Shown: piece after piece, positions 9 to 64,000 of the stretch
How positions within the stretch are numbered: position 1 is the stretch's first letter
Layout: every line of letters starts with the position of its first letter
Translations under genes and position numbers: made by a program
Assembly: GCF_001194135.2 (NCBI RefSeq)
Contig: NC_068990.1
Coordinates: 88,489,180 to 88,553,179, forward strand
DNA length: 64,000 nucleotides
From: Octopus bimaculoides
Lineage: Eukaryota
Direction of reading: 5' to 3'
The notes under the pieces: generated by a model
Databases searched by the model: none
What the model was told of the DNA's origin: nothing
The model's input: the letters and a program-made list of their open reading frames with translations, nothing else

Positions 9-242
9 TTGATGAGGATATTTTTACATTTAAAAATATTATCTTAGATGTGCAGGATGTTTTTGAACCACTGACAAATCTGAGCTTGAAGGAGTGTAAT
101 GGAGCTTGTCGTCAGACTCCAGGATGTAACTCTTATAAGTATAATGAAAAGAGAAAGTCCTGTCATGGAAACAATGCAACTTACTTGATCCATGACCTGA
201 AGCCAAACAAAAAGGGTTGGGATACTTACATCATTAACCCAG
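9..242 (+). CDS. Exon B1, PAN/Apple domain
   Basis: ttctag|TT...CCAG|gtcagt; 234 nt; DEDIFTFK...LKECNGACRQTPGCNSYKYNEKRKSC...WDTYIINP (C-x3-C-x5-C-x11-C). Confidence 0.9.
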
Positions 243-329
243 GTCAGTAGGGAGTTTACATTTTATTTATTGCGCATGCAATTACATGTGTGTGTTTGTG
301 TGTCTTTGCATTTATGTACATGTGTGTGT

Positions 330-366
<37 letters not shown>

Positions 367-3300
367 AAAATAAAAGAGAGGTTTGTATGATAGTGTATAG
401 AGGAATATATTATTTAAAAGAGTTCCAACTCTGTCTGTTTTTTATGTTTTATTTATATTCTTATAAAATTAATGTGGGATATAGAATATAGAATATATAA
501 TATAAATAGTAAAATGAAATGAAGTATTGAATGTCTTATTGAATATATGAAATATTGAGTATTAAATATATAAGGACTAGTATACTTTCCTGATGACTGC
601 CATGAGGCAGGAAAGTATACTAGTCCTTATATAAGACATTTGATACTTCATTTCATTGTACTAGTTATATTATATATTCCATATTCTATATCCCACATTA
701 ATTTTATAAGAATATAAATAAAACATAAAAAACAGAGTTGGAACTCTTTTAAATAATATACTTATATATATATACATGATAGCCATCTACTCATGACCAA
801 GGAAGACCATTGCTGACCTTTAAGAATATTGTGCGCTCTAGGACTAATATTTTGCATTTGCAGCTCTGTTGGTGGCTAATGAGCCCTACTCTTGATAAAC
901 ATACATGACTGCAAACATTGCAAATCAAGCTTTCTTCATTCACTACACTAGCAGTGCACTTTCGAGTAGCACGCTTAAATTTTTCATGCAGAATACGTAC
1001 TCTCTCAAAGGTGTCAACCCCCTCCTTAACCTGCTTCCTCCATCTGTAGTGATGACAGGCGTTGCTCTCCCAGACAGTCTCCTGCATATCACAGGCCTTT
1101 ATTGAGGACTTGGCTCAGTCTTTAAATCACAGCCTTGGTTTCTGCCAAGATCTTCTGTTGTATCATTATCAATTTCTGCTCTTTCTCACTCAGCTCCTAA
1201 TATATACTTATAATCAATTCTAGTTTTAGCAAAAGTTAACTGTGGAACTCCAAAAGAGGTTGTTGGTGCATCAAAGTTCTACAGTACCACCAAATATAAA
1301 TCTGAAGTGATCTATATTTGTCCTGGAGACGAAACACTAAAGTCAGTATGTGGGAAGGACAACAAATGGACTTCAGTAGCTCCTATTTGTGAAGGTAACG
1401 TAAATAACTTCTCTTTTGTTGCCTCTGTCTGGATAATTTTGTTTTGTTTTTGTGATAAATGTGTGACTACATACTGTAATAAGATATTATGATTAATTAA
1501 AACTTCACCCTCAGTGGGTTGTGAAATCAGTATTTTAAAGACTTATTCTGGTCATGAAATTCAGAAATGATAACCTCGTAAAGATAATTAGTTTTTTTTT
1601 TTTTTAGTTTTTTTTTTCCCCTGTTAAATGTGTAATTTTGATGAAATATGATTTCTTAGCTTGCTAACATTAAGTTTTGAGTGTCCACATTACTACATAT
1701 TTATATTTATTCACTGAATGATGATGATGATGAAAGGGAAATTACTTCAGTTTTCCCAAGCAAAACATTGTAAAATGTTAAAGTGATGGTTTATAAAAAC
1801 TTGCCATTACTAGGCACATTTACATTCTGAGCTTAAATTCCATTCTTTTACATCCTGAGCTTAAATCCCAATGGGATGTACTTTACCTTTCATACTTCTG
1901 AGGTTGATAAAACAAGCTGTATTCAAGTACTGAAGAATCCTCACTGAAGAATGTATGGCTTTGTGCTTAAGATAGAAACCACTATCATTAATATCTGTAA
2001 CTTCAACAATAGTTATAATTGTACTTGTTCTTAAAGGTGATGCATTGACAGAATCATTAGAGCACCAGATAAAATGTGTTGTGGTATGTGTTTGAGCTCT
2101 TTCAATTCTAAGTTTAAATCCTGCTGATATTAACTCTACCCCTTCAGGGCCAATTAAAATACAATGCCAGTCTTGGGGCCAATTTAATTGAAAATATCCT
2201 ACCTCAAAGATATGGGCTCATATCTGTATTAGAAATTACTATTATTGTTGTTGTTCTTATATTTCATTAGTCTAAATTTTATTTTGAATCTAGATACTAA
2301 GAACCAATTTATGAAAATAAAAGATGCATTTCTGGATGTACCCAACAAAACATTGGTGGACAGCGAAAATGTAACAGCAGAAACCTGTATAGAAAAATGT
2401 TTATCAGACAAAACTTGTTTATCATTTGAACTAACTAAAGAAAGTGGAAAATGTTACTTATTAAAGGAAAATGCAGCTTCTTCCAAGAAATTAAAGCCAA
2501 ACGAAAACAGAGATTACTACCAACGAATTAAACGTAAATATTTTTTGGGTTTTATTATTGGAATTCTCTTCCCAATTTTTTTCTGAAATTTGTGATTCCT
2601 AGTAGAGACCTCATCATCTTTTTTGAAATTTCACTTGAAAAGGTAGCTGATGGTGGAGAAGGAGGTGCTGTCCTTGTGTGAATTTATCTATTGGTGGGTG
2701 GAAGTGGCAAAAATGGCAAGAATAGATGGCACCACTATAAGTATAGTTTTGTGAGTCAGAGAACAGGAATTGGAGTGGCACTCGCCCTAAGTGCTCAGGG
2801 AGATCTTGAATGGTGGGCTTCCTTGATTGACCCCAGATGTCCTCCTACATCAAGAGAGTCATGACTATCACCCCATTCTTTCTAGTGATGTATACTATGT
2901 ATACGTTTTTCTTTTCCTTATACTGTATACTGTGAGTACTTACTACATTTCTTCTTACCATTATATTCTACGTCAATCACCACACTTTGTGTCCATCTTT
3001 GGGTCATACCCACAGCCATCACCCTGAAGGCAAATAAAAGGAATTGTTCTTCTTTCACAGATTTTTGGAAAATATTTAATTATATAGAAGTAGCATGTAA
3101 ACGAAATTCTAAATAAAATATGATAAAGCCATCTGGTGCATTGTTTTATAAAGGGATAATTTATTATAAAAACACAATCTGATTAAACATTTTTTACAAT
3201 AAGATACCTTCCCAGAATTCATGTGAATTTTAATACATCATGAGAGATAGTCAAAACGTCATCTCAATGTTTAGGATGTAGATAATCCAATTGTATATCA

Positions 3301-4081
3301 CTCTTCTGATGGTTTGCTTTTGTTTAATATTAAGTGGCTATAACAACACTTGACACTTGTTTAAGGGGGCACTGACCCTAAAAAAATTATACCATTAAAG
3401 AAGAGATGAACAAATGAATTAACTGCAGCCTAAATATTGAGACAAGGTTTCCAATAAGTTTGAAGAAGTTCTACAACTCACATGAATTATGATTAGGGTA
3501 TCATTTTGTTGATGAATTATTTGCTTATTATAAATTATCTATTTTAAAAAAATTATGCACCGTGTACTTTGTAATGTTTAATGTGTGCATGTTTTTGTGT
3601 GTGTATAAAATGTACTTCTTGTTTCCTTTTTTTACCTTCCAGCCAATGAAGAGCATATTATGCTTAAAAAAGTTAGTATACCTGGGCGAGATATTCTAGA
3701 AGTGCTTCGTAATATAGACTTAAAGAAGTGTAATAAAGCTTGTCATCAATATCCAGGATGCAATTCTTATGCATATGATGAGAAAAAACACATCTGTAGC
3801 CTGAGTGATGTTTCTCAGTTGACTGGTGAACTTAAACCCAATAATGTAAGTGCCGATATTTACATCATTAACCCAGGTCAGTAGAATATTTCCATCTTAT
3901 TTATTGTCTGCATGTCTGTGTGTCTATTTATATACATATATGAATGTAGTGTGCAATCTCTTATTTGACTCTGTACTTCACAAAAACTTTCTTTTCTGAA
4001 GCATATTTATATTGAGTTCTAACACCAGATTATTATTATCACTATGCCTTAGTGAAAAATGAAAATACATACATAATCGTG

Positions 4082-4114
<33 letters not shown>

Positions 4115-7100
4115 ACATCCATATATGTATGTATCATCATCATCATCATCATCATCGTTTAACGTCTGCTTTCTATGCTAGCATGAGTTGGATGATTTGA
4201 CTGAGGACTGGCGAACCAGATGGCTGCACCAGTCTCCAATCTGATCTGGCAGAGTTTCTACAGCTGGATGCCCTTCCTAACACCAACCACTCCAAGAGTG
4301 TAGTGGGTGCTTTTACGTGCCACCGGCACGAGGGCCAGTCTGGCAGTACTGACAACGGCCACGCTCAAATGGTGTTTTTTACGTGTCACCTGCACAGGAG
4401 ACAGTCCAGTGGCACTGGCAACAACCTCGCTCGAATGTTTTGTTCACGTACCAGTAAGGTGATGCTGGTAACAATCACGCTCAAATGATGCTTTTTACGT
4501 ACCACCGGCACAGAAGCCAGACAGCTGCTCTGGCAGTGGTCCTGCTCAGATGGAGGTGTTAGCGCTCCACTGGCACAGGTGCCAGTCGTCGAATTTGGTT
4601 TGATTTTGATTTCACTTGCCTCAACAGGTCTTCGCAAGCAGAGTTTTGTATCCAAAGAAGGAAAGGTACGCATAAGTGAGCTGGCTACACAACTGATAAA
4701 GGCCACGGGTTATGGTCTCACTTGTCTTGCTGGGTTTTCTCACACACAGCATATTTCCAAAGGTCTCAGTCACTAGTCATTGCCTCAGTGAGGCCTAATG
4801 TTCGAAGGTCGTGCTTCACCACCTCATCCCAGGTCTTCCTGGGTCTACCTTTTCCACAGGTTCCCTCAACCGCTAGGTGTGACACTTTTTCACACAGCTA
4901 TCCTCATCCATTCTCACCTCATGACCATACCAGCGCAATCATCTCTCTTGCACACCACAACTGATGCTTCTTAGGTTCAACTAGAAAAAGGAGGAAGTCA
5001 GAATTTTGGATAATTGTTATTTAGTGCTTTCACCTCATTTCAGAGAATCATCAGGAATAGTATTTTTACAGAAAATATCATTTATGTATATGTGAGTTAG
5101 TTGGAAAACTCTAGAATTGAATTAGAAAGAGAATGTTCTTTGTCATTTCAAGTTTCTGTGTGTGTAAGTATCTGTATGTGGCAAATTTTTTGAGGAAGGG
5201 AGAAAATAGGAAAAATGAAAGAATGAGGATGATGCAAATCAGTATCAATTGAATCCCTCAAGGAGACATAGGCAGTGCCGACAGATGACCGATGACCCTG
5301 TCTCATGCAAAAGAGTGATCAGTGACAGCTTTGTACACACTGATCTTAGTACCTTTATTCAGAGGGTTTTTGTTCCAGACTCTTTTGTGCTGTCTGCCAA
5401 ATGCACTTTCTGCCTTGACCAGTCTGTTGCCAACCACCTTGTTGATTTTGTTATTTGATGAACTCATGCACTTTAAGTAGGTGAACTGGTTAACTGCCTT
5501 TAGTTCAGTCTCACTGATGGTGATGTGAAGCAGGTATTATTCTTGCCATGGCGCACGTTGATAGAAGACTGTTATTTTCATTAAACTGACTTCTAAGCTA
5601 AAATACTAAGCTGCTTTTGTAAAGCAAGAGTTAATATCTTTGCCTGGGCAACAAAAACAACAGCATCTGCAAAAAGTAATTCATAAATAGCTTTTTCTGT
5701 TGTTCTGGTGTGATTTTATAGGTGCCTCAAGTTGAAATGTCTGTCATCGGTATGGTGCAGGATGTAGTGTGGATGCCATCTTCATCATCAGCATCATAGT
5801 CAAGAAGATAGAGAAAAGGGTTGGGATGTGGACATAGCCTTGCTTCACATCATTGCCAGCAGAAAAGGGCTTGGAAAGACTGTTGCTGTGCATGGTCTGG
5901 CCCTGTCAGTTGTCATATAGCTAGATGATCATGTTGAGGAATTTGAGGGAACATCCAAAACACTTCAGGATTTGCTCTAGACCTCTTCTGCACAGTGTCA
6001 AATGCTTTGGTGAGGTCAACAAAGGTAATGTGAAGTCCTTTGTTTTTACTTTCTGAATTCCTATTGGAGTTGTCTCATGCTTGCTCAGAAACTGCAATGG
6101 GTTTCTGAAAGGTTTTCTTCTACAATAGTGAGCAGTACTTTCACAAAGATTTTGCTCACAATAGAGAACAAGTGACCCAGATCAGTAGAATATTTCCATC
6201 TTGTTGGACTTAAAGAAGTGTAATAAAGCTTACCATCAATATCCAGGATGTAATTCTTATGCATATGATGGAAAAGAAGAGGAGTAGTTGGAGCCAACCA
6301 CACACCTAGACACCAACTCAGATATTTCCACCTCCCCATTTATACATACTCATGTACACATATTGTTGGATGACCACACCCACCTCACCAAGCAAGCTTG
6401 ATGGGGTTGCCAGTTTGGTCGCTAACGACCCAACCATGCAACAGGTTGTACTGGGTTACATGTTACCAGTAGCTCTCAAGAGTGACTTGACATACATACA
6501 CACACACACACACACATACATACATACATACATACATTCATTCATTCATTCATTCATTCATTCATTCATCTATTTATTTATCTGTGTGCAAATTACTTCA
6601 GTTTGTTTCACTTAATACTTTTTATTGTAACATTGTCATTTTCTCATCATTTTAACCCTCTTTCTAACATAATGCATCCCATTGATATCAATTTGTTTTT
6701 TTAACTTCAGCTTACACAAAAGTTAACTGTGGGCCTCCAAATGATGTTATTGGAGCATCAAAGTCTTACAAAACCACCACCTATAAATCTGAAGTGACCT
6801 ACTCTTGCCCAAAGGGAGAAAAACTAAAGTCAATATGTAACAAGGACAACAAATGGAGTCCAGTAGCACCTGTTTGTAAAGGTAATGTAAAAAACTTCTC
6901 TTTTGTTACCTCTGTCTTTGTAATTTTGTTAGGATTTTTTTTCTTTAAATCAAATTTTATATTCTTTCCCCATTTTTATACCTGGAAACAAACCTTTTTT
7001 AATACCTCACTTCTGCATATATCCAGATGCCTAAATTATATATCATAAAACCCCATCTTTGAAACAGAATTGAAGAAATATTTATAAATACATAGCCCAC

Positions 7101-9258: not shown

Positions 9259-9299
<41 letters not shown>

Positions 9300-9705: not shown

Positions 9706-9778
<73 letters not shown>

Positions 9779-13425: not shown

Positions 13426-13495
<70 letters not shown>

Positions 13496-16313: not shown

Positions 16314-16347
<34 letters not shown>

Positions 16348-57100: not shown

Positions 57101-59445
57101 GTGAATTTTTAACCATGCAGACAAAATTCCACCTACTTCAATATTGTTGTAAACTTATTACTTCCAAAGCTAAACCTCCACAACTCAACTTGATAGATAG
57201 TCTCTTTATTTCTAACTTGACTTTTCACACCTGCACTTTGTGGCATCCTTCAAAGGAAATGATTTTTATATTACCTGATAAAGTATTGCAAAACAGTAAA
57301 GTGATGAGTTATAGTCTGATCTTTGATTAATCATATTTAGTTACATCCTTTTACACTCAGGCTTCAAATCCCACCTGGATGTACTTAACCTTTCATAATT
57401 CTGAGGTTGAAAAAACAAGCTTTATTCAAGTACTGAGGTTGATTTATTTTATGTATCCTCACTGCAGAATATGTGGCCTTGTATTTAAGTTAGAAATAAT
57501 TATCATTAATATTGGTAACATCAATAATAATTAAGTGTATTCTTGTTGTTTATGGTGATGGATTGTCAAGATCATTAGAGCATTGGACAAAATGCATTGT
57601 GGTATTTGTTCTGGTTCCTTATCTTCTGAATTCAAATCCTGCTTATGTTAATTTTGCCTTCCAGGGCCAAGAAAATGAAATACCAATGAAGTGCAGAGGC
57701 CATTTTACTTGACCAATTCTGGCCCCAAAGATATGACCTAATTTTTATTGTAGAAATTTTTATGTTGTTGTTATTTTTCATTGGTCTGAATTTTACTTTA
57801 ACTATAGATCCTCAGATTCATTTTGCGAAAGTAAGAAGTGCAGCTCTGGATGTATCTGGGAAAAGATTATGGAGTAAGAAAAAAGTAACAGCAGAAGACT
57901 GTGCAGAAAAATGTTTGTCTGACAAAACTTGTTTATCATTTGAAATAACTAAAGAAAGTGGCAAATGTTACTTATCACATGAAAGTGCAGCTCTCTCCAA
58001 GAAAATGAAACTAGACACTAGCAGAGATTACTATCAACAAGTAAAACGTAATTATTCTTTGTATTTTATTATTGGAATTCTCTTTGCTTCTTTTTCTGAA
58101 ATTTGTGATTCGATTTGTACTTCATAGTATATAGACAGCCATTTCAATGAAGACATTGACAGGTTTACCTGTAAGGACAGGCATATACACATTCTAGACA
58201 TAAGCAATATTAGGAACTGTAAATACCGTTATTCTCATGCAACTTTTATTGAACAATTTTATGCATGCTTTCAATCATATTTCTGTGTAAGAAAAGAAAC
58301 TTACGTTGTTCTTCTTAAAACTGACCAGGATTAGTGGTTGTGGTGGTGGTAGGAGTTGGAATATGAGTAATGGCAGCAGTAGTAGTAGTAGTAGTACATG
58401 ATAACACTTCCAATCAGTTAAGATCAGAAGCTATGAGAGCTACTGCCTGATACTGCATCAGGGCATATTATTATTATTATTATTATTATTTTATTTGCAC
58501 ATCTTCTAATGCTGGAGATGTACTATGGTGTCAGTTGTTTACTACCAGTGAACTAAGGTAACGCCCCTTATTTTTCAAGCACCATCTAGAATATTCGAGT
58601 GGTTCCAAGGAGTGCTGTTTTCTGCAAGTACTCCACTCTTATTGCAGCCCCTATTTGTTTCATGTACTTCTCAAGATTTTTACTCACTTTTCCCAGAGCT
58701 CTGACAATTATTAGTACTACTACCACCTTTTTCAGCGACCAAAACTGCTTAACCTCCCAAGCTAACCTGTCATATCTATCGACTTTTCTTTCTTCCTTGT
58801 CACATATCTTGTTGTCAGCTGGGCATGCTATAACTATGATCTAGCATCATTTGCTTTCTTTCTCAATTAACACTATGTTTGGTTTCCTATCCTCTATCTC
58901 ATGGTCGCATTGAATCATAAAATCCCATAGGATCTTTGCATTATCATTTTTCGATGATACCTTTATGCTCGTACCACTTTTTTGCTCTGTCAAGTTCATA
59001 CTTGTTGCAAAGTGTTCAATGGACAATCCTTGCTATATTGACATGACATCTCTTATAGTCTTTCTACCCTAGTGGCGTACATTGACTGGTAATATGCCAT
59101 ACGGTTTCACCATTCTGCACTTATCACTTTCTGATGTGCTGTGTATTCTGTATTTGATGTAATTGGTTCTTAATACTTACTCCTGAGCAGCACAGATTAG
59201 AGCCTCCGTTTCCGGTTTTAAATCACTTTTAGTCATCCATAGCCATCTTTTTTCTTTGTCTTTCTTCTTCAACATCCCTATGAAATTGTCCATGCATTCT
59301 TTTCTTTATCCACCTATTTTCAGTTTCATTCATTCTCAAGTGTTTGTGCAGTGCTTATCTATGCAATCTTTCATCATGCACAAGTCAAAGGTCATTATTA
59401 TTATTGTTGTTGTTGTTACTACTACTACGACTACTGCTGCTGCTG

Positions 59446-59477
<32 letters not shown>

Positions 59478-62400
59478 GCTGCTACTGCTGCTGCTGCTTT
59501 AGAGCTGTTTTTAAAACTAGATAATTATGTAGAAGTACCAGTAATTGAAACTGTGAATAGAATATTAGAAAAACAACCAGTGAGTTATTTCATAAATGAA
59601 CAGTATATTACAAAAACACCATCCATCAGCAAACTTATTTTTCAGAATAAGTCATGCTTCTCAGAAATATTGTGAATTCTAATAAATCATGGAATCTCAC
59701 TTCAGTGTTTAGGTTGTATATAATACATTTGTACATCCTTCTGATGATGATGTGCATTTGTTTAAGACAGAATGGTACAACAATACTTGACACATAGGCT
59801 GACAACCTGTTTCAAGGAATACTGATGTTACAAAATCAAACCATTACAGAAGAGATGTACAACTGTATTATCTGCCACCTAAATAGGGAGACAAGATTTC
59901 CAAAAAGTTTGAATGTGTTTTACAACTCATATGAATTCTAGTTAGAGTGTCCTTTCATGGATCAAATATATGTTTATAATAGATTGATAATTTACAAAAT
60001 TATGCACAATTTGCTTTACAGTATTTAATATAAATGCATGTGTAAAAAATGTATTTCTTGCATTCTATTATTTTCCAGACAATAAGGAGCCAATTATGTT
60101 TCAAAACGTTAGCATACCAAAGACTACATTCGGACAGTTTGAGGACATGACTTTAAAGGAGTGTAATGAAACTTGTTATCAATATGAAGGATGTAATACT
60201 TTTCTGTACAATGAACAAGATACGTTATGTGATCTGAGCAATGTGACTCAGTTGACTGGTGAACTTAAACCCAACAAAAAAGGTTGGAATATTTACATAG
60301 TTAACCCAGGTCAGTAGAGTGTTTCCATTTTATTTATTACCTGTTTGACTGTGTGTATTTACATATAAATATATTAGTGTGTGTGTGTGTGTGTGTGTCC
60401 CTTTCTTGTATCACCTAACTGTCTGGATGTTTTGTGTTCTTGTCCCATTTTGTATTATTCATATATATATATATATATATAGCAGCGTACATCCAGTTTG
60501 GTCTCTTATGTGTAAGTATACATTTTTCTAAATCTTGTACGACTCTATTTCTGTTTATCAGCCCTTTTACTCTTACTCGTTCATTCCACTCTTCGTTCTT
60601 TCGTTCTCCCTCTCTCACATTTCCTTGCCATTTCTTCTTGCTCACTTTCTCTCCACTTTTCACTTCACTGTGTCCCTGTCACTTTTTCTCTCCCCTCCTC
60701 AATTCTTTTGTCCCTCTGCCTCTACCTCTCTCTCTTCTCTTCCCACGTGACCGGCGTTTGGTCAAGCCTGATCTTTCTTTCTTGGCCAGCCATTGTGCAT
60801 GCAACATCGATATTTCTCCGTGCCTGTGAAATCTTGTTACCCTGCCGTAAGGCTTTATTTCCATACATGCCAGCTTAATTTAATTCCTCCTTAGTTGAAA
60901 GACATTTGTTGTTATGTCCTGTTATTATTATTTTTATTGTATTTGTGTAACATTGTTCAGTTTTTTTCCGTCCTTGTTTTTGTATACATTGGCTGCTGTC
61001 TTCCAAGGAATCTAATACTCTTAGCTTAGGTTTTCCTTGGGGCTGGCCAGATTGGAATAATATCGAGTATAACCAGCTGAAATTGCAAAGATAATCTGAA
61101 ACTCGACTGATGAAAGAAAACTCCGAATGACCTGTCCTTGTTTTCTTTGTATTGTCTATATGGATGTTTTGTTGTCCCTTTCTTGTATCACCTCTCTTGA
61201 TGTTTTGCGTTCTTGTCCCATTTTGGAGAAAAGCTGAACATTAGAAGCATCAGTTGTGGCGTGCAAGAGAGACGATTGCGCTGGTATGGACATGTGGTGA
61301 GAATGGAGGAGGATAGCTGCGTGAAAAAGTGCCACACCCTAACAGTTGAGGGAACCCGTGGAAGAGGTAGGCCCAGGAAGACCTGGGCTGAGGTGGTGAG
61401 GCAAGACCTTCGTACATTGGGCCTCACCGAGGCGATGACTACTGACCGAGACCTTTGGAAATGTGCTGTGCGTGAGAAGACCCGGCAAGCCAAGTAAGAT
61501 CGTTGCCAGTGCCCCTGGACTGGTTCTTGTGCGGGTGGCACATGAGNNNNNNNNNNNNNNNNNNNNNNNNNNNNNNNNNNNNNNNNNNNNNNNNNNNNNN
61601 NNNNNNNNNNNNNNNNNNNNNNNNNNNNNNNNNNNNNNNNNNNNNNNNNNNNNNNNNNNNNNNNNNNNNNNNNNNNNNNNNNNNNNNNNNNNNNNNNNNN
61701 NNCTGGCTTGTGCGGGTGGCACATAAAAGACACCATTTCGAGCGTGGCCGTTTTCGTGCGGGTGACACGTAAAAGCACCCACTACACTCTCTGAGTGGTT
61801 GGCGTTAGGAAGGGCATCCAGCTGTAGAAACTCTGCCAAATCAGACTGGAGCCTGGTGTTGCCATCCGGTTTCACCAGTCCTCAGTCAAATCGTCCAACC
61901 CATGCTAGCATGGAAAGCGGACGTTAAACGATGATGATGATGATGATGATGATATATATATATATATATCATGGCACAATCATTTTAGCCTAGTTTCCTT
62001 TTCTTCACAGAGAGCTTAAAAGATATTTCAGCAGGATCCTTAATCATTTCTTTTCATGTGATATATGTATGTCTGTATCTATGCGGACATCTTCAGTTTG
62101 TTACACTCAATATCTTTTATTCTAAATTTGTTATTATCTCCTCATTCTCACCCTCTTCCTAACATACATTCACCATTGATATCAATTTCTATTATCACTT
62201 CTAGATATTACAAGAGTTGAATGTGGACCTCCAAAAGATGTTGTTGGTGCAAAGAAGTCCTACACTAACACCTCCTATAAATCTGAAGTGACCTACACAT
62301 GTCCAGGAAAAGAAATATTAAAATCGTTATGTAAAGAGAACTCTAAATGGACTCCAGTTGCATCTAATTGTAAAGGTAAATAGGTTCTCTCTTGTTGTCT

Positions 62401-64000
62401 TTGCCTACGTATTTTTGTTTAATTATTTTGTCAAATATTTTTGTCAGGGGAAGAATAGTTGAATCCATGACAATTTCCATTGTATTTGTGGCTGGTTTGA
62501 GGGAGAGCGAAAGCTAAGCTCAGACCAGATAACTTCCCAAACATTTGTGACAGAGTGAACTTCATTGAAACTATCCAAGGATCAGGTAATGGTATTAATT
62601 TTGGTGATGGATTAAACACGCCAGCCAAGAACAGCAAATGAGGAATCTTGTTCTCTCCAGCAGGCTTCTACTAGTTTCTGACCATTATATTTCATTCGCA
62701 AGGCTTAGTTGTAAAGTAGATATTTAGCCATGCTACCACAAGTCCAGACAGTACCACATTAAGTTAATTTTTTTTCTACATTTACCTTTGTTCTTTATAC
62801 ATTAGAAATTATTATTGTTGTTGTTGTTTTTGTTGTCTGCATTTTTGCATTTGTCTCAATTTTACTTTAATTCCAGTTACTAAGCTCCATTTTGTGAAAG
62901 TAAAAGGTGCAGTTCTTGATACACCTAAGAAAACCTTGTGGGATAAGAAAAATGTAACAGCAGATGCGTGTGCACAAAAATGTCTATTTTATGCAGATTG
63001 TTTAATGTTTGAAATAGACAAAGGAAGTAGAACATGTTACTTCTCAAAGCAAAGTGCAGCTTCCTCCAAGAAATTAAAACCAATGAAAGGCAGAGATTAC
63101 TACCAACGAATAAAATGTAATTATTCTACGTGTTTCTCTTTACCTCTTTTTCTGAAATCTGTGATTTCATTTGTACTTCATAGTGTACAGAAAACCACTT
63201 CTGCAAAGACAGACAGGTTTATCTATAAGGACAGACATAAGTATATTCCAGAAATAAGCAACTTTACGAACTGTAATAACAGCCATTATTCATTTTGAAC
63301 ATTTTAAGCATGTTTTCAGTTGCTTCTTTCTCTGTGTGTAAGCAAGGAAATTCTTGTTATTTTACTTAAACCTGAGTAGTAGTAGTAGTAGTAGTAAGTA
63401 GTAAGTAGTAGTAGAGCTGGCTCAAGACAAACACCATGTCCATGGTGTTTTGGTTTGTTCTAAAACAACAGTAGTTCTCAGAGAGATGATCCACAGCAAT
63501 GGTCAATATATAAAACCACTCCATAATGAGTAGTATTCAGGCCAGGATCTTTCGTGTGATGGCAGGGTAATGCCTCTGTGATTGGAGCTTTGTAACTTTT
63601 TTCCTTATTCTTATAAAGAGTGATGTTGACTGCATTTTTGATGTCTGGAGGAAGTATACCATGCTCCCAGAATTATTCAAAAATAGGTTGTCCTTTTAAA
63701 ACTAATTATGCATCAGATGCTATATGACATTTAATGTGTCTGAGTATGAAATGTATTCCTTGTTTTCTTCCTTTTTCCTTTCTAGCGCATGATGAGATTT
63801 TACCAATTAAAAGCACTTCCATACCTGGGCAGGATACTTTTGGACAGCTGGAAAACGTGAGCTTAAAGGAGTGTGATAAAGTTTGTCATCAAACTCCAGG
63901 ATGTAAATCTTATGAGTATAAGGAAAAAGCTAAGACCTGTGATCGAAGTAATGCAACTCACTTGACACATGACCTTGAGCCCAATAAAGAGGGTTGGGAT
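9..64000 (+). CDS. Partial multi-exon gene for a giant tandem PAN/Apple-PAN/Apple-Sushi(CCP) repeat protein (37 exons, about 2,600 aa in window, open at both ends)
   Basis: Order B1 C1 A1 B2 C2 C2b A2 B3 C3 A3 B4 C4 A4 B5 C5 A5 B6 C6 C6b A6 B7 C7 A7 B8 C8 A8 B9 C9 A9 B10 C10 C10b A10 B11 C11 A11 B12. Exon lengths are multiples of 3, all phase 1, with no stops in exons or junction codons. No ATG/signal exon, TM exon or terminal exon seen. Confidence 0.9.
406..760. repeat. Long fold-back inverted repeat with a hammerhead-like core at its centre
   Basis: Left arm tatattatttaaaagagttccaactctg...aaggactagtatactttcctg is mirrored by caggaaagtatactagtcctt...cagagttggaactcttttaaataatata. Confidence 0.85.
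780..1200 (-). mobile_element. RTE-type LINE 3' fragment
   Basis: Minus ORF ending ICNVCSHVCLSRVGLISHQQSC resembles the C-terminal CxxC...H...C motif of RTE-clade ORFs. Confidence 0.65.
1224..1394 (+). CDS. Exon C1, Sushi/CCP domain
   Basis: ttctag|TT...GAAG|gtaacg; 171 nt; LAKVNCGTPKEVVGASKFYSTTKYKSEVIYICPGDETLKSVCGKDNKWTSVAPICE. An in-frame alternative AG lies at 1228-1229. Confidence 0.88.
2294..2533 (+). CDS. Exon A1, PAN/Apple domain
   Basis: tctag|AT...AAAC|gtaaat; 240 nt; NVTAETCIEKCLSDKTCLSFELTKESGKCY...RDYYQRIK. Confidence 0.9.
3643..3876 (+). CDS. Exon B2, PAN/Apple domain
   Basis: ttccag|CC...CCAG|gtcagt; 234 nt; LKKCNKACHQYPGCNSYAYDEKKHIC. Confidence 0.9.
4135..4980 (-). mobile_element. 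RTE-like retroelement 3' end with (GAT)n tail
   Basis: (cat)n tail followed by the same 3' UTR seen at 13548, 21749, 34413 and 61500. Confidence 0.8.
5330..6170 (-). mobile_element. Degenerate RTE-like reverse transcriptase fragment
   Basis: Broken minus-strand reading includes LFSIFLTMML, similar to the RTE RT core; many stops. Confidence 0.55.
6711..6881 (+). CDS. Exon C2, Sushi/CCP domain
   Basis: ttcag|CT...AAAG|gtaatg; 171 nt; YTKVNCGPPNDV...YSCPKGEKLKSICNKDNKWSPVAPVCK. Confidence 0.9.
7385..8170 (+). mobile_element. Penelope-like relic: inverted terminal-repeat pair plus ORF N-terminal fragment
   Basis: 7385-7460 is an inverted copy of 7590-7675, and the same repeat follows the Penelope ORF at 12250-12385. 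The Lys/Gln-rich ORF 7936-8178 follows. Confidence 0.45.
8170..8575 (-). mobile_element. LINE fragment directly upstream of exon C2b
   Basis: Minus ORF GTQCKLWTHKRCSEITGRL...FVCDRCAG; homologous pieces at 32790-33115, 41935-42165 and 55990-56545. Confidence 0.65.
8623..8793 (+). CDS. Exon C2b, second consecutive Sushi/CCP domain
   Basis: tttcag|TT...AATG|gtaatg; 171 nt; YAHINCGPPKEV...YTCPKGEQLKSTCERGSRWTYVVSACN. Confidence 0.88.
10283..10522 (+). CDS. Exon A2, PAN/Apple domain
   Basis: ttccag|TT...GACC|gtaatt; 240 nt; NVTAEACAEKCLTDKTCLSFEINKDNEKCY. Confidence 0.9.
10570..12390 (+). mobile_element. Penelope-like retroelement, 5'-truncated (RT C-terminal part plus GIY-YIG endonuclease)
   Basis: GAGIG...LFM...LLYSRYVNNI (RYVDD-like RT motif, mutated) then NCRTRNVVYSIRC...YTGETSGTIVERLNEH (GIY-YIG); one stop and a terminal frameshift. 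Confidence 0.85.
13004..13237 (+). CDS. Exon B3, PAN/Apple domain
   Basis: atccag|CC...CCAG|gtcagt; 234 nt; DGCQEACYLYSDCSSYSFNIKAKVC. Confidence 0.9.
13290..13545. repeat. Compound microsatellite (CTAT/CTGT/CT/AT)
   Basis: Runs read directly from the sequence. Confidence 0.9.
13548..13945 (+). mobile_element. Young RTE-like 3' UTR copy with (GAT)n tail
   Basis: Near-identical to 61495-61955; internal sub-repeats gttgccagtgcccctggactgg. Confidence 0.85.
15558..16130 (-). mobile_element. Mariner transposase 3' relic
   Basis: Minus ORF DFHLFP...FQKWLKHWDQCIAAQGDYF (mariner C-terminus); end ggtggtatcaaaa shared with the 45177 copy. Confidence 0.8.
16374..16544 (+). CDS. Exon C3, Sushi/CCP domain
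   Basis: tttcag|CT...AGAG|gtaatg; 171 nt; HRKINCGPPKDI...YTCPGGETLESVCKEDNKWTAVASDCR. Confidence 0.9.
17407..17643 (+). CDS. Exon A3, PAN/Apple domain
   Basis: ttctag|AT...AGAC|gtaatt; 237 nt (one codon shorter, in frame); EDCANECLSDETCFSFEISRGSGKCY. Confidence 0.9.
18146..18379 (+). CDS. Exon B4, PAN/Apple domain
   Basis: atctag|CT...CCAA|gtcagt; 234 nt; KECHQACHQTPGCNSYEYNERAQIC. Confidence 0.9.
18465..19330 (-). mobile_element. Tc1/mariner (DD37D-like) transposon relic
   Basis: TA|CAGGGTG terminus; minus ORF VWQQDSAPC...WPPNSQECNPLDYYVWG; other end not found. Confidence 0.8.
20060..20230 (+). CDS. Exon C4, Sushi/CCP domain (absent from ORF track)
   Basis: ttccag|TT...AAAG|gtaatg; 171 nt; KANINCGLPKEVVGAVKFYKTTTYKSEVTYTCPKGEQLKSTCEKNNKWSPMVETCK. 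Confidence 0.9.
21749..21921 (+). mobile_element. Short young RTE-like 3' end with (GAT)n tail
   Basis: Almost identical to 13777-13945. Confidence 0.85.
22431..22670 (+). CDS. Exon A4, PAN/Apple domain
   Basis: actcaag|AT (AAG acceptor)...AAAC|gtaatt; 240 nt; EACGEKCMSDETCLSFEIIKESGKCY. Confidence 0.85.
23170..23700 (-). mobile_element. Old CR1/L2-like LINE 3' fragment
   Basis: Heavily broken minus-strand reading resembling a CR1-type RT C-terminus. Confidence 0.4.
24198..24305. repeat. 29-bp minisatellite, about 3.7 copies
   Basis: Unit cttgtcctgtacttttccaagtgtaataa, head-to-tail with no spacers. Confidence 0.9.
24440..24673 (+). CDS. Exon B5, PAN/Apple domain
   Basis: ttctag|CC...CCAG|gtcagt; 234 nt; NECNKACYQSRRCNSYQYNQEDKTC. 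Confidence 0.9.
25479..25649 (+). CDS. Exon C5, Sushi/CCP domain
   Basis: tttcag|CT...AAAG|gtaata; 171 nt; FKNINCGPPKRV...YTCPGGNELKATCKEDNQWVPKVSSCK. Confidence 0.9.
27121..27360 (+). CDS. Exon A5, PAN/Apple domain
   Basis: ttacag|TT...AACC|gtaatt; 240 nt; DMCAEKCLSDITCLSFEITEENGKCY. Confidence 0.9.
27828..28061 (+). CDS. Exon B6, PAN/Apple domain
   Basis: ttccag|TC...ACAG|gtcagt; 234 nt; MQCYQACHKTLRCNSFEYNERSKLC. Confidence 0.9.
28340..28861 (+). mobile_element. Candidate solo LTR (GC-rich insertion; internal part duplicated by assembly)
   Basis: Starts TGTAG, ends CTTATA, flanked by a taat direct repeat; AATAAA at 28742; absent from the paralogous intron near 53455-53540. Confidence 0.5.
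29045..29900 (-). mobile_element. Tigger/pogo-like DDE transposase relic
   Basis: TFLAGEEVTTPGYKAPKNRLTLLLGGNA...KLKPMLIYRTMNPRALK is Tigger-type; C-terminal EEHSEELTTDEL and QFVDKYHP segments. Confidence 0.85.
30330..30545 (-). mobile_element. Dispersed SINE-like element
   Basis: Reverse complement of the element at 50636-50850 (gactggtacttaatttattgacc...gatgaaaggcaaa); further minus copies near 26215-26410 and 32340-32530. Confidence 0.7.
31150..31365 (+). mobile_element. RLE-type (R4/Dong-like) LINE C-terminal fragment
   Basis: RNLQIQYP...FIPTIIGATG...LQMIAIAGTIEIC resembles the tail of restriction-like endonuclease LINEs. Confidence 0.5.
31557..31727 (+). CDS. Exon C6, Sushi/CCP domain
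   Basis: ttctag|GT...GAAG|gtaatg; 171 nt; FQKIDCGPPKDV...YNCPRGGVFKSMCEKDKKWTPVPPTCE. Confidence 0.9.
33165..33335 (+). CDS. Exon C6b, second consecutive Sushi/CCP domain
   Basis: tttcag|CC...AAAG|gtaatg; 171 nt; YADIDCGTPKEV...YTCPKGEQLKSICETNNKWTPVAKTCK. Confidence 0.9.
34413..34615 (-). mobile_element. Short young RTE-like 3' end
   Basis: (cat)n then the reverse complement of 13760-13940. Confidence 0.85.
35423..35662 (+). CDS. Exon A6, PAN/Apple domain
   Basis: ctctag|AT...AAAC|gtaatt; 240 nt; EACARKCLIDERCLSFEMSKKNRKCY. Confidence 0.9.
35990..36620 (+). mobile_element. Old RTE-like LINE fragment
   Basis: Broken KAKARSAF-like RT C-terminal reading; related piece at 44980-45175. Confidence 0.5.
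37278..37511 (+). CDS. Exon B7, PAN/Apple domain
   Basis: ttgcag|CC...CCAG|gtcagt; 234 nt; QECNETCYQNSVCSSYEYNKKAKLC. Confidence 0.9.
38465..38635 (+). CDS. Exon C7, Sushi/CCP domain
   Basis: ttccag|CT...AAAG|gtaatg; 171 nt; YTKVDCGQPKDI...YTCQEGEKLKSVCKEDHKWTPVVSSCK. Confidence 0.9.
39020..39950 (+). mobile_element. Tx1/L1-like LINE fragment
   Basis: KWAERKLSLKSQAEVASAYIVPIIYY resembles the Tx1/L1 post-RT region; degenerate. Confidence 0.5.
40456..40695 (+). CDS. Exon A7, PAN/Apple domain
   Basis: ttccag|TT...AGAC|gtaatt; 240 nt; DACAQKCLSYKNCLSFDINKVSGDCY. Confidence 0.9.
41581..41814 (+). CDS. Exon B8, PAN/Apple domain
   Basis: ttccag|CT...CCAG|gtaggt; 234 nt; KECEKACYQIPRCKSYEYNVRAKIC. 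Confidence 0.9.
42437..42725 (-). mobile_element. RTE-like RT fragment joined directly to a (GAT)n 3' tail
   Basis: MAFVDMEKAFDRV...FNVQVGVHKGSVL (RT motifs). Confidence 0.8.
42890..43060 (+). CDS. Exon C8, Sushi/CCP domain
   Basis: tttcag|CT...AATG|gtaacg; 171 nt; FSNVDCGLPKDV...YTCPEGNQLKSTCEKHKIWSQVTPTCN. Confidence 0.9.
44261..44500 (+). CDS. Exon A8, PAN/Apple domain
   Basis: ctctag|AT...AAAC|gtaatt; 240 nt; EACAEKCLSDKKCLAFEINKEKGKCY. Confidence 0.9.
45177..45715 (-). mobile_element. Mariner 3' relic, same family as 15558
   Basis: Shared end ggtggtatcaa...ttcc.ggactag.tatgtttaataaaaa and colinear body. Confidence 0.75.
46277..46510 (+). CDS. Exon B9, PAN/Apple domain
   Basis: ttccag|CC...CCAG|gtcagt; 234 nt; KQCGKACGHYAGCNSYQYNEKAKLC. 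Confidence 0.9.
46691..47180. repeat. Inverted repeat, about 88-bp arms and about 310-bp spacer
   Basis: 46691-46779 and 47093-47180 are reverse complements with an identical core of about 68 nt. Confidence 0.85.
48084..48146 (+). ncRNA. Candidate type I hammerhead ribozyme
   Basis: taataa-CTGATGA-gga...tct-GAAAC-tctga-GTA-ttatta: 6-bp stem I, intact core, GUA cleavage triplet. Confidence 0.6.
48311..48478 (+). CDS. Exon C9, Sushi/CCP domain
   Basis: ttacag|TT...AAAG|gtaatg; 168 nt; VSKVDCGPPKDI...YICREGEELKAVCKEDKKWAPEVSCK. Confidence 0.9.
50094..50333 (+). CDS. Exon A9, PAN/Apple domain
   Basis: atccag|TT...AATC|gtaatt; 240 nt; EVCAEKCLSEKICLSFEINKENGNCY. Confidence 0.9.
50636..50850 (+). 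mobile_element. Relatively young SINE-like element
   Basis: gccgaggtcgactttgcctttcatcc...aataaattaagtaccagtt; degenerate homologs precede the A exons. Confidence 0.7.
50866..51180 (+). mobile_element. Possible non-autonomous Helitron-like element 5' part
   Basis: tctatatatata...gtgtgtctgtg...ccaatttcattcaaattt start; 3' end lost in the N gap. Confidence 0.3.
52654..52887 (+). CDS. Exon B10, PAN/Apple domain
   Basis: ccctag|CC...CCAG|gtcagt; 234 nt; AECDEACYELAECKSYEYNEKTKLC. Confidence 0.9.
53195..53432. repeat. Fold-back element with two degenerate hammerhead motifs
   Basis: Arms ttacattatttacatttga... and ...tcaaatgtaaataatgtaa around gaaatttcga-gcaggt-tcgaaatttc. Confidence 0.8.
54265..54432 (+). 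CDS. Exon C10, Sushi/CCP domain
   Basis: ttccag|TT...GAAG|gtaatg; 168 nt; LAKINCGPPNDV...YTCPGGRKLKSACKRDTKWTSVAPCE. Confidence 0.9.
54925..55455 (+). mobile_element. Older RTE-like 3' UTR copy
   Basis: Degenerate match to 13548-13945 ending gttaaacgatgatgat. Confidence 0.65.
56593..56763 (+). CDS. Exon C10b, second consecutive Sushi/CCP domain
   Basis: tttcag|CC...AAAG|gtattg; 171 nt; YADIDCGNPKDI...YTCPEGGQLKSTCETNNKWTLVAESCK. Confidence 0.9.
57808..58047 (+). CDS. Exon A10, PAN/Apple domain
   Basis: ctatag|AT...AAAC|gtaatt; 240 nt; EDCAEKCLSDKTCLSFEITKESGKCY. Confidence 0.9.
58480..59250 (-). mobile_element. RLE-type (R4/Dong-like) LINE 3' fragment
   Basis: Minus reading has a GETVWHITSQC zinc-knuckle piece and IVIACPAD...LGKVSKNL...LQKTALLGT; (TAA)n tail. 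Confidence 0.7.
60079..60309 (+). CDS. Exon B11, PAN/Apple domain
   Basis: ttccag|AC...CCAG|gtcagt; 231 nt; KECNETCYQYEGCNTFLYNEQDTLC. Confidence 0.9.
61224..61955 (+). mobile_element. Young RTE LINE 3' end (ORF C-terminus, 3' UTR, (GAT)n tail)
   Basis: ERRLRWYGHVVRM...GRGRPRKTW...DRDLWK-stop is a typical RTE C-terminus; internal N gap. Confidence 0.88.
62205..62375 (+). CDS. Exon C11, Sushi/CCP domain
   Basis: ttctag|AT...AAAG|gtaaat; 171 nt; ITRVECGPPKDV...YTCPGKEILKSLCKENSKWTPVASNCK. Confidence 0.9.
62877..63116 (+). CDS. Exon A11, PAN/Apple domain
   Basis: ttccag|TT...AAAT|gtaatt; 240 nt; DACAQKCLFYADCLMFEIDKGSRTCY. Confidence 0.9.
63786..64000 (+). CDS. Exon B12, PAN/Apple domain (cut by window end)
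   Basis: ttctag|CG; HDEILPIKSTSIPGQDTFGQLENVSLKECDKVCHQTPGCKSYEYKEKAKTCDRSNATHLTHDLEPNKEGWD. Confidence 0.88.

What the first reader, a model, noticed from the sequence alone, without database searches (positions are those of the whole stretch)
9..64000. Giant [PAN-PAN-Sushi]n protein encoded one domain per exon
Seen: 37 intact exons, about 2,600 aa, running off both ends of the window. Copies differ strongly in amino-acid sequence, yet none has a stop or frameshift, and all indels are whole codons (A3, B11, C9, C10). Established: PAN/Apple domains bind proteins or glycans, and CCP/Sushi domains occur in complement and adhesion proteins. I do not recognise a named protein with this repeating triplet. 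Inference: a lineage-specific, very large extracellular recognition or matrix protein, possibly immune, mucus or egg-coat related.
Basis: partly seen in the sequence, partly recalled or inferred. Interest (0 to 1): 0.82.

Follow-up and report, generated by a model that had tools for sequence, protein, structure and literature searches.

The report
Giant octopus PAN–PAN–Sushi repeat gene
The window is an internal 64-kb slice of an enormous, octopus-specific gene that encodes a probably secreted protein built from hundreds of small disulfide-bonded binding domains, one per exon; the gene is real and kept intact by selection, but nobody has studied it and its function is unknown.

Summary
The + strand carries 37 exons (36 complete, one cut at 64000). 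All have AG/GT borders and are phase 1-1, and they splice into 2,603 codons with no stop. Exon types A and B are PAN/apple domains and type C is a short Sushi/CCP domain. The order is not a pure triplet: 3 of 11 units carry two Sushi exons, giving an eroded 13-exon super-repeat (ABCC-ABC-ABC-ABC). All four N gaps are intronic, and the two 10-N gaps are unmerged contig overlaps.

Selection is evident. Random substitution at the observed level predicts about 83 stop codons, and none occur. Exon indels are 20–30 times rarer than in the flanks and are all whole codons. All 148 cysteines are invariant. Amino-acid change is nevertheless fast (dN/dS about 0.6–0.9).

The window is orthologous, exon for exon, to uncharacterised Octopus sinensis models (LOC118764741 and LOC118764742). 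In O. bimaculoides the same array runs for at least 568 kb on one strand and ends in a PAN + GON tail.

Close relatives exist only in Octopus. Small PAN/Sushi + GON proteins, several with signal peptides, in cuttlefish and abalone look like the unexpanded form. Function is inferred only: a multivalent extracellular binding or matrix glycoprotein.

The parts
9..242 (+). Exon 1, type B (PAN/apple), 234 nt, phase 1-1
   Evidence: The orthologue is in O. sinensis P0007 (82% aa) with AG/GT conserved.
1224..1394 (+). Exon 2, type C (Sushi/CCP), 171 nt
   Evidence: The orthologue is in P0007 at 89% aa. A second in-frame AG lies at 1228-1229.
2294..2533 (+). Exon 3, type A (PAN), 240 nt
   Evidence: The orthologous exon in L005 is 85% aa identical.
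3643..3876 (+). Exon 4, type B, 234 nt
   Evidence: The orthologous exon in L005 is 86% aa identical.
6204..6275 (+). Dead fragment of a B exon; not part of the coding sequence
   Evidence: A B-exon donor plus about 25 nt of intron is fused to 78 nt of mid-exon. It is flanked by stops and has a Cys>Tyr change.
6711..6881 (+). Exon 5, type C (subtype with K-[VI]-[ND]-C N-terminus), 171 nt; first of a C-C doublet
8623..8793 (+). Exon 6, type C (subtype with A-x-I-[ND]-C N-terminus), 171 nt; second of the doublet
10283..10522 (+). Exon 7, type A, 240 nt
13004..13237 (+). Exon 8, type B, 234 nt; the most divergent B copy
16374..16544 (+). Exon 9, type C, 171 nt
17407..17643 (+). Exon 10, type A, 237 nt (one codon shorter)
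18146..18379 (+). Exon 11, type B, 234 nt
20060..20230 (+). Exon 12, type C, 171 nt
22431..22670 (+). Exon 13, type A, 240 nt
24440..24673 (+). Exon 14, type B, 234 nt
   Evidence: Orthologue: P0008 residues 111-188, 79%.
25479..25649 (+). Exon 15, type C, 171 nt
   Evidence: Orthologue: P0008 residues 189-245, 89%.
27121..27360 (+). Exon 16, type A, 240 nt
   Evidence: Orthologue: P0008 residues 246-324, 89%.
27828..28061 (+). Exon 17, type B, 234 nt
   Evidence: Orthologue in P0008, 91%.
31557..31727 (+). Exon 18, type C, 171 nt; first of a doublet
   Evidence: Orthologue in P0008, 91%.
33165..33335 (+). Exon 19, type C, 171 nt; second of the doublet
   Evidence: Orthologue in P0008, 91%.
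35423..35662 (+). Exon 20, type A, 240 nt
   Evidence: Orthologue in P0008, 83%.
37278..37511 (+). Exon 21, type B, 234 nt
   Evidence: Orthologue in P0008, 83%.
38465..38635 (+). Exon 22, type C, 171 nt
   Evidence: Orthologue in P0008, 89%.
40456..40695 (+). Exon 23, type A, 240 nt
   Evidence: The P0008 model is mis-spliced at this point.
41581..41814 (+). Exon 24, type B, 234 nt
   Evidence: Orthologue in P0008, 90%.
42890..43060 (+). Exon 25, type C, 171 nt
   Evidence: Orthologue in P0008, 88%.
44261..44500 (+). Exon 26, type A, 240 nt
   Evidence: Orthologue in P0008, 78%.
46277..46510 (+). Exon 27, type B, 234 nt
   Evidence: Orthologue in P0008, 78%.
48311..48478 (+). Exon 28, type C, 168 nt (one codon shorter)
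   Evidence: Orthologue in P0008, 80%.
50094..50333 (+). Exon 29, type A, 240 nt
   Evidence: Orthologue in P0008, 81%.
52654..52887 (+). Exon 30, type B, 234 nt
   Evidence: Orthologue in P0008, 81%.
54265..54432 (+). Exon 31, type C, 168 nt; first of a doublet
   Evidence: Orthologue in P0008, 89%.
56593..56763 (+). Exon 32, type C, 171 nt; second of the doublet
   Evidence: Orthologue in P0008, 91%.
57808..58047 (+). Exon 33, type A, 240 nt
   Evidence: Orthologue in P0008, 80%.
60079..60309 (+). Exon 34, type B, 231 nt (one codon shorter)
   Evidence: Orthologue in P0008, 79%.
62205..62375 (+). Exon 35, type C, 171 nt
   Evidence: Orthologue in P0008, 89%.
62877..63116 (+). Exon 36, type A, 240 nt
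   Evidence: Orthologue in P0008, 86%.
63786..64000 (+). Exon 37, type B, cut by the end of the window
   Evidence: Orthologue in P0008, 85%.

Best explanation
Shown:
- The window is an internal piece of a very long octopus gene. Every exon encodes exactly one small disulfide-bonded extracellular domain, in the order PAN(A)-PAN(B)-Sushi(C), with an extra Sushi in about every fourth unit.
- All exons are phase 1-1.
- The array grew by tandem duplication of multi-exon blocks. Traces of a 2-unit and a 4-unit (13-exon) period remain.
- The duplications happened long before this species split from O. sinensis. Since then each repeat has kept its own identity (orthologues 77-91% identical, paralogues 44-59%), so there has been no concerted evolution.
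- Selection keeps the frame, the splice sites, four cysteines per domain and the N-glycosylation sequons, while the remaining residues change fast (dN/dS about 0.6-0.9). Changes between species fall at the same positions that differ between repeats.

Inferred:
- The array is one transcription unit. In O. bimaculoides it spans at least 568 kb, which extrapolates to roughly 250-300 exons and about 20,000 aa. It ends with a last PAN domain and a GON domain.
- The product is a secreted, lysine-rich, N-glycosylated beads-on-a-string protein. It probably works as a multivalent extracellular binding scaffold, lectin-like or protein-binding, in a matrix, mucus, egg-envelope or surface-recognition setting.
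- It arose in octopods by internal expansion of a small secreted PAN/Sushi + GON protein of the kind still found in cuttlefish and abalone.
For: Gene structure:
- 37 exons with AG/GT borders, all phase 1-1, splicing to 2,603 aa with no stops. Donor and acceptor consensus sequences are specific to each exon type.

Domain identity:
- PAN_1 matches at E = 4e-168 with 23 stretches, and Sushi reaches 88.8 bits.
- A profile of the unit hits the CCP modules of CR1, CR2, DAF and MASP-2, and the apple domains of TgMIC4.
- Fold-search hits for the B-domain model are almost all PAN/apple folds.

Selection:
- 0 stop codons against 83 +/- 9 expected; exon indels are 20-30 times rarer than in the flanks and are all whole codons.
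- 148 cysteines, exactly 4 x 37, all invariant.
- Exons are the conservation peaks relative to their flanks.
- A dead B fragment at 6204 shows what an unconstrained copy looks like.

Evolutionary rate:
- Paralogue dN/dS is 0.9 for A, 0.6 for B and 0.65 for C.
- Orthologue dN/dS is 0.79 over 4 exons, with splice sites conserved.
- Orthologue differences fall on the columns that vary among paralogues, r = 0.40-0.58.

Orthology and age:
- Window 1-5906 is collinear with O. sinensis L005, introns included, at 87-96%.
- P0008 is collinear with exons 14-37, including both C-C doublets.

Super-repeat:
- An offset of 13 exons gives z = 0.57, p = 0.002. The top self-BLAST hits lie at offsets of about 22-24 kb.

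Size and continuity of the array:
- O. bimaculoides models lie head to tail from 88.25 to 88.82 Mb.
- Intact exons in the correct order fill the spaces between models, and models start inside exons.
- O. vulgaris has a model spanning 416 kb, flanked by more models of the same kind.

C-terminal tail:
- GON matches at E = 6e-33 in P0002.

Relatives:
- Sepia P0017 is PAN-Sushi-Sushi-GON. GON-Sep-2 is a signal peptide + Sushi + GON. Haliotis proteins are a signal peptide + PAN + GON.
Against: - No transcript or proteomic evidence could be consulted.
- The N-terminus and signal peptide of the giant gene were not found.
- Public annotations split the locus into many models, so several genes cannot be excluded.
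- Single C domains sit at or just below Pfam's Sushi cut-off (21.9 and 18.5 bits against 20.7). A fold search of a confident C model (pLDDT 86) found no CCP match.
- dN/dS near 1 is also what relaxed constraint would give, and the orthologue estimate rests on only 65 substitutions.
- The functional statement rests only on what these domain families do elsewhere.
Confidence: 0.75

Rival explanations
1. The locus is a cluster of several separate, head-to-tail genes of the same family, each of roughly 700-4,500 aa, rather than one giant gene. The window would then hold part of one or two of them.
For: NCBI and other pipelines annotate 6 or more models in O. bimaculoides, and several in O. sinensis and O. 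vulgaris.
Against: - No model starts with a signal peptide. All of them start inside a domain.
- Only the last model has a non-repeat C-terminus.
- Intact exons in register fill every gap between models.
- The window has no intron longer than 3.5 kb and no terminal-exon or first-exon candidate.
Confidence: 0.2
2. The symmetric exons are used combinatorially: cassette or mutually exclusive splicing would make each transcript carry only a subset, so the array would generate many isoforms of a recognition protein.
For: - All exons are phase 1-1 and modular, so any subset stays in frame.
- Every repeat is distinct and individually conserved between species.
- The protein evolves fast.
- Gnomon models skip many intact exons. 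P0008 has 2,643 aa over 153 kb.
Against: - No RNA data were available.
- Exon types alternate A-B-C rather than forming blocks of alternatives.
- Similarity in the intron flanks is no higher than at synonymous sites, so there is no sign of conserved docking or selector elements.
- The exon skipping in predicted models is more simply a prediction error.
Confidence: 0.1
3. The exons are relics of a once-functional array that is now decaying or only partly used.
For: - dN/dS is 0.6-0.9 and the three codon positions are about equally conserved.
- A few broken copies exist in other species' loci, and there is one dead fragment in the window.
Against: - 0 stops against about 83 expected, and no frameshifts.
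- All 148 cysteines, all splice sites and the sequons are kept, and kept again in the O. sinensis orthologues.
Confidence: 0.04
4. The repeat array is an assembly artefact, that is, a repeat expanded or collapsed during assembly.
For: There are four N gaps, and two of them have duplicated flanks.
Against: - The copies differ by 25-55% in protein and are not near-identical.
- Exon order and identity are reproduced in an independent assembly of another species.
- The duplicated flanks are only 113 and 204 nt and lie in introns.
Confidence: 0.02

Closest known systems
Octopus sinensis LOC118764742 (XP_036361601.1, P0008) and LOC118764741 (P0007); O. vulgaris CAI9728790.1 (P0154); O. bimaculoides LOC128248837, LOC128248838, LOC128248840, LOC106869402 and LOC106869390
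   Same: They have the same domains, the same one-domain-per-exon structure and the same ABC/ABCC order. P0008 and P0007 are exon-for-exon orthologues of window exons 14-37 and 1-2 at 77-91% aa identity.
   Different: All are computer-predicted fragments that start inside domains and contain mis-spliced stretches. None is characterised, and the 'SVEP1-like' names are automatic. The window comes from a different, closely related species (about 92% exon and 87-96% intron identity).
Small molluscan PAN/Sushi + GON proteins, several with clear signal peptides: Acanthosepion (Sepia) pharaonis CAE1175485 (PAN-Sushi-Sushi-GON) and 'GON-Sep-2' R4FJA6 (Sushi-GON); Haliotis 'ADAMTS9/20-like' proteins of about 300 aa (PAN-GON)
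   Same: They have the same C-terminal cassette as the last O. bimaculoides model (27-45% identity over PAN/Sushi + GON). GON-Sep-2 and the Haliotis proteins have signal peptides; the Sepia PAN-Sushi-Sushi-GON model starts inside a PAN domain.
   Different: They have 1-3 domains before GON, against hundreds in Octopus. They are also uncharacterised. The GON tail lies outside the window.
Multi-CCP proteins (complement receptors CR1 and CR2, DAF, SVEP1, CSMD)
   Same: The C domain matches their CCP modules. It has four cysteines and an invariant Trp. They also tend to have one domain per phase-1-1 exon and long arrays (established knowledge).
   Different: In the window each Sushi (or Sushi pair) is separated from the next by two PAN domains. 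No VWA, EGF, pentraxin or CUB domains were found. Outside Octopus these proteins match the query only across a Sushi-Sushi stretch, at about 30% identity.
Multi-apple/PAN adhesins and lectins (Toxoplasma MIC4, Sarcocystis SML-2), and factor XI/prekallikrein apple domains
   Same: The B domain's best solved relatives by profile and by fold are these PAN/apple modules. They also occur as tandem PAN modules. MIC4 and SML-2 bind galactose (from the PDB entry titles and established knowledge).
   Different: The octopus PAN domains have 4 cysteines, not the 6 of classic apple domains. There is no protease domain. Sequence identity is 15-20%. Sugar binding has not been tested.
ADAMTS9, ADAMTS20 and GON-1
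   Same: They share a GON domain at the C-terminus.
   Different: No metalloprotease, disintegrin or thrombospondin repeats were detected in P0002, so only the terminal module is shared.

Membership tests
PAN/apple domain (Pfam PF00024, clan PAN) | Match to the PAN_1 profile above the curated cut-off | tested here: met
   A scores 44.7 bits and B scores 31.3 bits against a cut-off of 21.4. The whole product has 23 matched stretches at E = 4e-168.
PAN/apple domain (Pfam PF00024, clan PAN) | Conserved core cysteines (two core disulfides) | tested here: met
   Four cysteines are invariant in all 11 A and 12 B copies.
PAN/apple domain (Pfam PF00024, clan PAN) | Apple subtype: a third disulfide joining the N- and C-termini (6 cysteines) | tested here: not met
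   There are only 4 cysteines per domain. These are generic PAN modules, not classic apple domains.
PAN/apple domain (Pfam PF00024, clan PAN) | Fold: one helix packed on a curved antiparallel sheet | tested here: inconclusive
   The B model has pLDDT 65, with one helix and 5 strands. The top Foldseek hits are nearly all PAN folds, but E is 0.08 or higher.
Sushi/CCP/SCR domain (PF00084) | Profile match above the cut-off | tested here: met
   Single C domains are borderline (21.9 and 18.5 bits against 20.7). The sum over the whole protein is 88.8 bits. A profile of the unit hits the CCPs of CR1, CR2, DAF and MASP-2 at E = 1.6e-8 to 1e-3 over the whole domain.
Sushi/CCP/SCR domain (PF00084) | Four cysteines in the pattern C..C..C..W..C, with an invariant Trp | tested here: met
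   C6, C32, C42, W48 and C55 are invariant in 14 of 14 copies.
Sushi/CCP/SCR domain (PF00084) | Beta-sandwich CCP fold | tested here: inconclusive
   The model has pLDDT 86 and is all-beta. Foldseek against the PDB gave no significant hit and no CCP among the top hits. The query is very short (56 aa).
SVEP1 (the automatic name of several Octopus models) | VWA, EGF, HYR and pentraxin domains alongside the CCP array | tested here: not met
   Only PAN-family and Sushi profiles match the window product, P0001 and P0005. P0002 adds GON.
ADAMTS9 / ADAMTS20 / GON-1 | Reprolysin metalloprotease, disintegrin-like and TSP1 repeats before the GON domain | tested here: not met
   P0002 has GON (E = 6e-33) but none of the other domains. 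The GON tail is outside the window.
Molluscan secreted PAN/Sushi + GON proteins (an uncharacterised group) | A C-terminal PAN or Sushi followed directly by GON, and an N-terminal signal peptide | tested here: inconclusive
   The tail cassette is present in the O. bimaculoides orthologous locus. It is not in the window, and the N-terminus of the octopus gene was not found.
Dscam-type alternative-exon arrays | Clusters of same-type alternative exons, with one chosen per transcript, and conserved intronic docking or selector sequences | not testable with these tools
   There is no RNA data. Exon types alternate rather than cluster, and the intron flanks are no more conserved than synonymous sites.

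The most novel reading that the evidence does not exclude
The whole 0.6-1 Mb array is one gene whose roughly 250-300 symmetric, individually conserved domain exons are spliced combinatorially. Octopods would then make a large repertoire of isoforms of a giant secreted recognition protein, functionally comparable to Dscam or to other diversified invertebrate recognition molecules but built from PAN and Sushi modules. Even without combinatorial splicing, a single product of about 20,000 aa would rank among the largest animal proteins.
Probability: 0.1. Interest if true: 0.85.

Novelty: new variant of a known kind. Interest (0 to 1): 0.5.

Why it matters
Giant modular extracellular proteins built one domain per exon are a known kind; SVEP1, CSMD and fibrillin are examples. 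This one differs in several ways:
- The repeating unit (PAN-PAN-Sushi, sometimes with a second Sushi) followed by a terminal GON domain was not found in any other characterised protein.
- It appears to be confined to octopods, and it occupies more than half a megabase.
- It combines very strict preservation of frame, splice sites and cysteines with near-neutral amino-acid turnover.
- Each repeat has been kept as an individual for longer than the species have been separate.

That combination is typical of proteins at a recognition interface, such as immunity, gamete or egg envelope, or surface and mucus chemistry.

It also exposes a practical problem. Current octopus annotations break the locus into arbitrary fragments with misleading SVEP1-like or ADAMTS-like names. 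The gene is therefore invisible in expression and proteomic studies unless it is re-annotated.

Tried and rejected
- **Fold test of the C domain.** A confident model gave no significant PDB match, so the test is inconclusive and C rests on sequence profiles.
- **Search for the 5' end and signal peptide.** P0009 is not on record. A second homologue search returned no new models, and that tool never returned the models longer than 2,000 aa.
- **DNA of the P0008 and P0154 loci.** The genes are too long for DNA to be returned. Orthologue dN/dS is therefore limited to four exons, and the rest of the comparison is protein only.
- **Transcript evidence from short database fragments.** These proved to be single-exon genomic ORFs with intron read-through, not spliced cDNAs.
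- **O. bimaculoides orthologue of the window.** It is not among the four loci fetched (best 78%).
- **Conserved intron flanks as possible regulatory or docking elements.** Rejected, because flank identity (0.65-0.78 in the first 50 nt) equals third-codon-position identity and decays smoothly.
- **A strict 13-exon period as a general rule.** Rejected, because the spacing of the C-C doublets is irregular in the O. bimaculoides loci.
- **Literature.** Seven searches found nothing on this family.
- **Other genes or RNAs in the window.** No Rfam families and no tRNAs were found. Of ten intron ORFs scanned, only a sub-threshold GIY-YIG (mobile-element-type) hit and two other weak sub-threshold hits (PHD finger, DUF3071) appeared.

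Full report
**What is in the window**

The sequence is AT-rich metazoan DNA (36% GC in exons, 35% in introns) with microsatellites and transposon debris. tblastn with one peptide of each recurring type finds 37 copies, all on the + strand, plus one 24-codon fragment.

Each type has its own conserved splice signals:
- A: ...ttctag|AT ... AAC|GTAATT
- B: ...ttccag|CC ... CAG|GTCAGT
- C: ...ttcag|CT ... AAG|GTAATG

With these borders, all 36 complete exons have AG/GT, lengths divisible by three (A 240 nt, B 234 nt, C 171 nt, with four one-codon deletions) and phase 1-1. They splice into 2,603 codons without a stop, open at both ends of the window. Introns are 467-3,495 nt (median 1.55 kb), and coding sequence is 12% of the window.

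**Assembly gaps**

All four gaps are intronic, and the expected exon order continues across each of them. The two 10-N gaps are flanked by 113-nt and 204-nt stretches that are 100% identical. They are unmerged contig overlaps, so the sequence is continuous there. The 306-N gap abuts a TA-rich microsatellite, and the 156-N gap lies in repeated DNA. Because every exon is phase 1-1, the frame cannot be broken by a gap. The O. sinensis orthologue has the same exon order across all four places.

**Domain identity**

- A and B match Pfam PAN_1 well above the cut-off. C matches Sushi at or just around the cut-off per single domain, and at 88.8 bits over the whole product.
- A profile of ten A-B-C units hits the CCP modules of CR1, CR2, DAF and MASP-2 over the entire C domain. 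Through B it hits the apple domains of Toxoplasma MIC4 and Sarcocystis SML-2.
- An AlphaFold model of B (pLDDT 65) retrieves almost only PAN/apple folds, though none is individually significant.
- A confident model of C (pLDDT 86) retrieved nothing significant, so the fold test for C is inconclusive.
- Each of the 37 domains has exactly four cysteines, all invariant. C also has the invariant Trp of CCP modules.
- The product is lysine-rich (12.6%) and has 35 N-X-S/T sequons, several at conserved positions.

**Order and repeat history**

The order is B C | ABCC ABC ABC ABC | ABCC ABC ABC ABC | ABCC ABC AB. It is therefore not a strict triplet. B exons fall into two subtypes that alternate, and C exons fall into two subtypes. 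Similarity between same-type exons is highest at an offset of 13 exons (z = 0.57, permutation p = 0.002), with echoes at 6-7, 20 and 26 exons. The strongest DNA self-matches lie at offsets of about 22-24 kb. This fits duplication of 2-unit and then 4-unit blocks. In the O. bimaculoides loci the spacing of the double-C units is irregular, so the 13-exon period is local and not a rule.

**Selection**

- Copies differ by 41% (A), 56% (B) and 42% (C) in protein on average.
- Applying the observed number of substitutions at random predicts 83 +/- 9 stop codons, and none are present. Exon indels are 20-30 times rarer than in the adjacent 300 intron columns, and all of them are whole codons.
- Exons are the local conservation peaks. 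Identity falls from 0.66-0.78 in the exons to about 0.35 a few hundred bases away.
- Protein evolution is nevertheless fast. Paralogue dN/dS is about 0.9 (A), 0.6 (B) and 0.65 (C), and the three codon positions are about equally conserved.
- For the four exons with orthologous DNA, exon identity (92.5%) barely exceeds intron identity (87-96%), and dN/dS is 0.79, while splice sites and cysteines are unchanged.
- Substitutions between orthologues concentrate on the same columns that vary among repeats (r = 0.40-0.58).
- A rearranged B fragment at 6204-6275, with flanking stops and a Cys>Tyr change, shows what an unconstrained copy looks like.

**Relatives and genomic setting**

Two word-indexed searches of 5.8 billion proteins and one exhaustive HMMER scan of 1.84 billion representatives find close relatives (54-64% identity to P0002) only in Octopus. 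Below them there is a sharp drop to proteins that share only a Sushi-Sushi stretch (about 30% identity) or only GON.

Window 1-5906 is collinear, introns included, with the end of the O. sinensis LOC118764741 locus. The next O. sinensis model, LOC118764742 (P0008, 2,643 aa over 153 kb), is collinear with window exons 14-37 at 77-91% identity, including both double-C units. The window is therefore from a close relative of O. sinensis, and the array predates their split without later homogenisation.

In O. bimaculoides, models of 1,133, 709, 1,865, 761, 4,083 and 1,067 aa lie head to tail on one strand from 88.25 to 88.82 Mb of CM046610.1. Intact exons in register fill the spaces between models, and the models start inside exons, so the boundaries are annotation artefacts. 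At about one exon per 1.9 kb this extrapolates to roughly 250-300 exons and about 20,000 aa. That figure is an inference. In O. vulgaris one model alone spans 416 kb and is flanked by more of the same kind.

The last O. bimaculoides model ends with PAN + GON (PF08685, E = 6e-33) and is followed by a CACHD1-like gene.

**Probable origin**

Cuttlefish have a PAN-Sushi-Sushi-GON protein and a secreted Sushi-GON protein ('GON-Sep-2'). Abalone have secreted PAN-GON proteins of about 300 aa. Other gastropods attach GON to Sushi arrays or EGF arrays. Argonauta has a secreted four-PAN protein. The octopus gene is best read as an internal hyper-expansion of such a small secreted PAN/Sushi + GON protein. 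This is an inference.

**Function**

Nothing tested here bears directly on function. The following points are consistent with a multivalent extracellular binding or matrix glycoprotein at a fast-evolving interface: the domain families, the secreted relatives, the glycosylation sequons, the fixed disulfide scaffold with persistently variable positions, and the lectin nature of the nearest solved PAN relatives. Whether that interface is immune, reproductive or surface and mucus chemistry is open.

No paper in the searchable library mentions these genes.

**Verdict**

The feature is a real, selected, lineage-specific giant gene that has been predicted in databases but never described: a new architectural variant of a known kind of protein.

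Noticed in passing
window 28502-28737 and 47228-47685: Both 10-N gaps are flanked by exact duplicates (113 nt and 204 nt; the second lies across a (TG)n run). These are contig ends that overlap but were not merged, so each place carries a small spurious duplication.
   Followed up: yes
window 6204-6275: A dead, rearranged scrap of a B exon lies in the B4>C5 intron. A donor plus about 25 nt of intron is fused to 78 nt of mid-exon, with flanking stops and a Cys>Tyr change. It is 90% identical to the O. sinensis B4 exon.
   Followed up: yes
window 10664-11842 (+): Intron ORFs of 105 and 283 aa. The longer one has a weak GIY-YIG nuclease match (22.2 bits, just under the cut-off), as in Penelope-like retroelements. 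It is probably transposon debris.
   Followed up: partly
window 13697-13948, 21748-21919, 61703-61955: A repeat of about 170-250 nt is present in three introns at 97-98% identity, far younger than the exon duplications. It is probably a recently active SINE-like element. One copy borders the 156-N gap.
   Followed up: no
window 18746-19039 (-), 42465-42677 (-), 61213-61497 (+): These short intron ORFs read like transposase or reverse-transcriptase remnants (for example the motif AFVDMEKAFDRV). Pfam gave no above-cut-off match, only a weak DUF3071 hit for the third ORF.
   Followed up: partly
L005 53581-53699 (O. sinensis): O. sinensis carries an extra partial copy of exon A3 about 1.7 kb upstream of the real one (92% identical to window 2391-2509). 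This copy is absent from the window. In addition, the B1>C2 intron is about 4 kb there, against 1 kb in the window.
   Followed up: no
window, all exons: First, second and third codon positions are about equally conserved between repeats (for A: 0.76, 0.80 and 0.78). This is unusual for coding sequence and reflects near-neutral amino-acid turnover outside the cysteine scaffold.
   Followed up: partly
window 3157-3534 versus L005 61081-61458: A 378-nt intron stretch just upstream of exon B4 is 96% identical to O. sinensis, higher than the exons (92.5%). The same flank is alignable upstream of B8 and B34 at about 70%. It may be regional rate variation or a conserved intronic element.
   Followed up: no
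L001-L004 (O. bimaculoides CM046610.1, 88.25-88.82 Mb): Public gene models here start inside exons, skip intact exons and read through donors into introns (for example the '...RNYSL...' tails). The automatic names (SVEP1-like, ADAMTS9-like, zonadhesin-like) are misleading for this family.
   Followed up: yes
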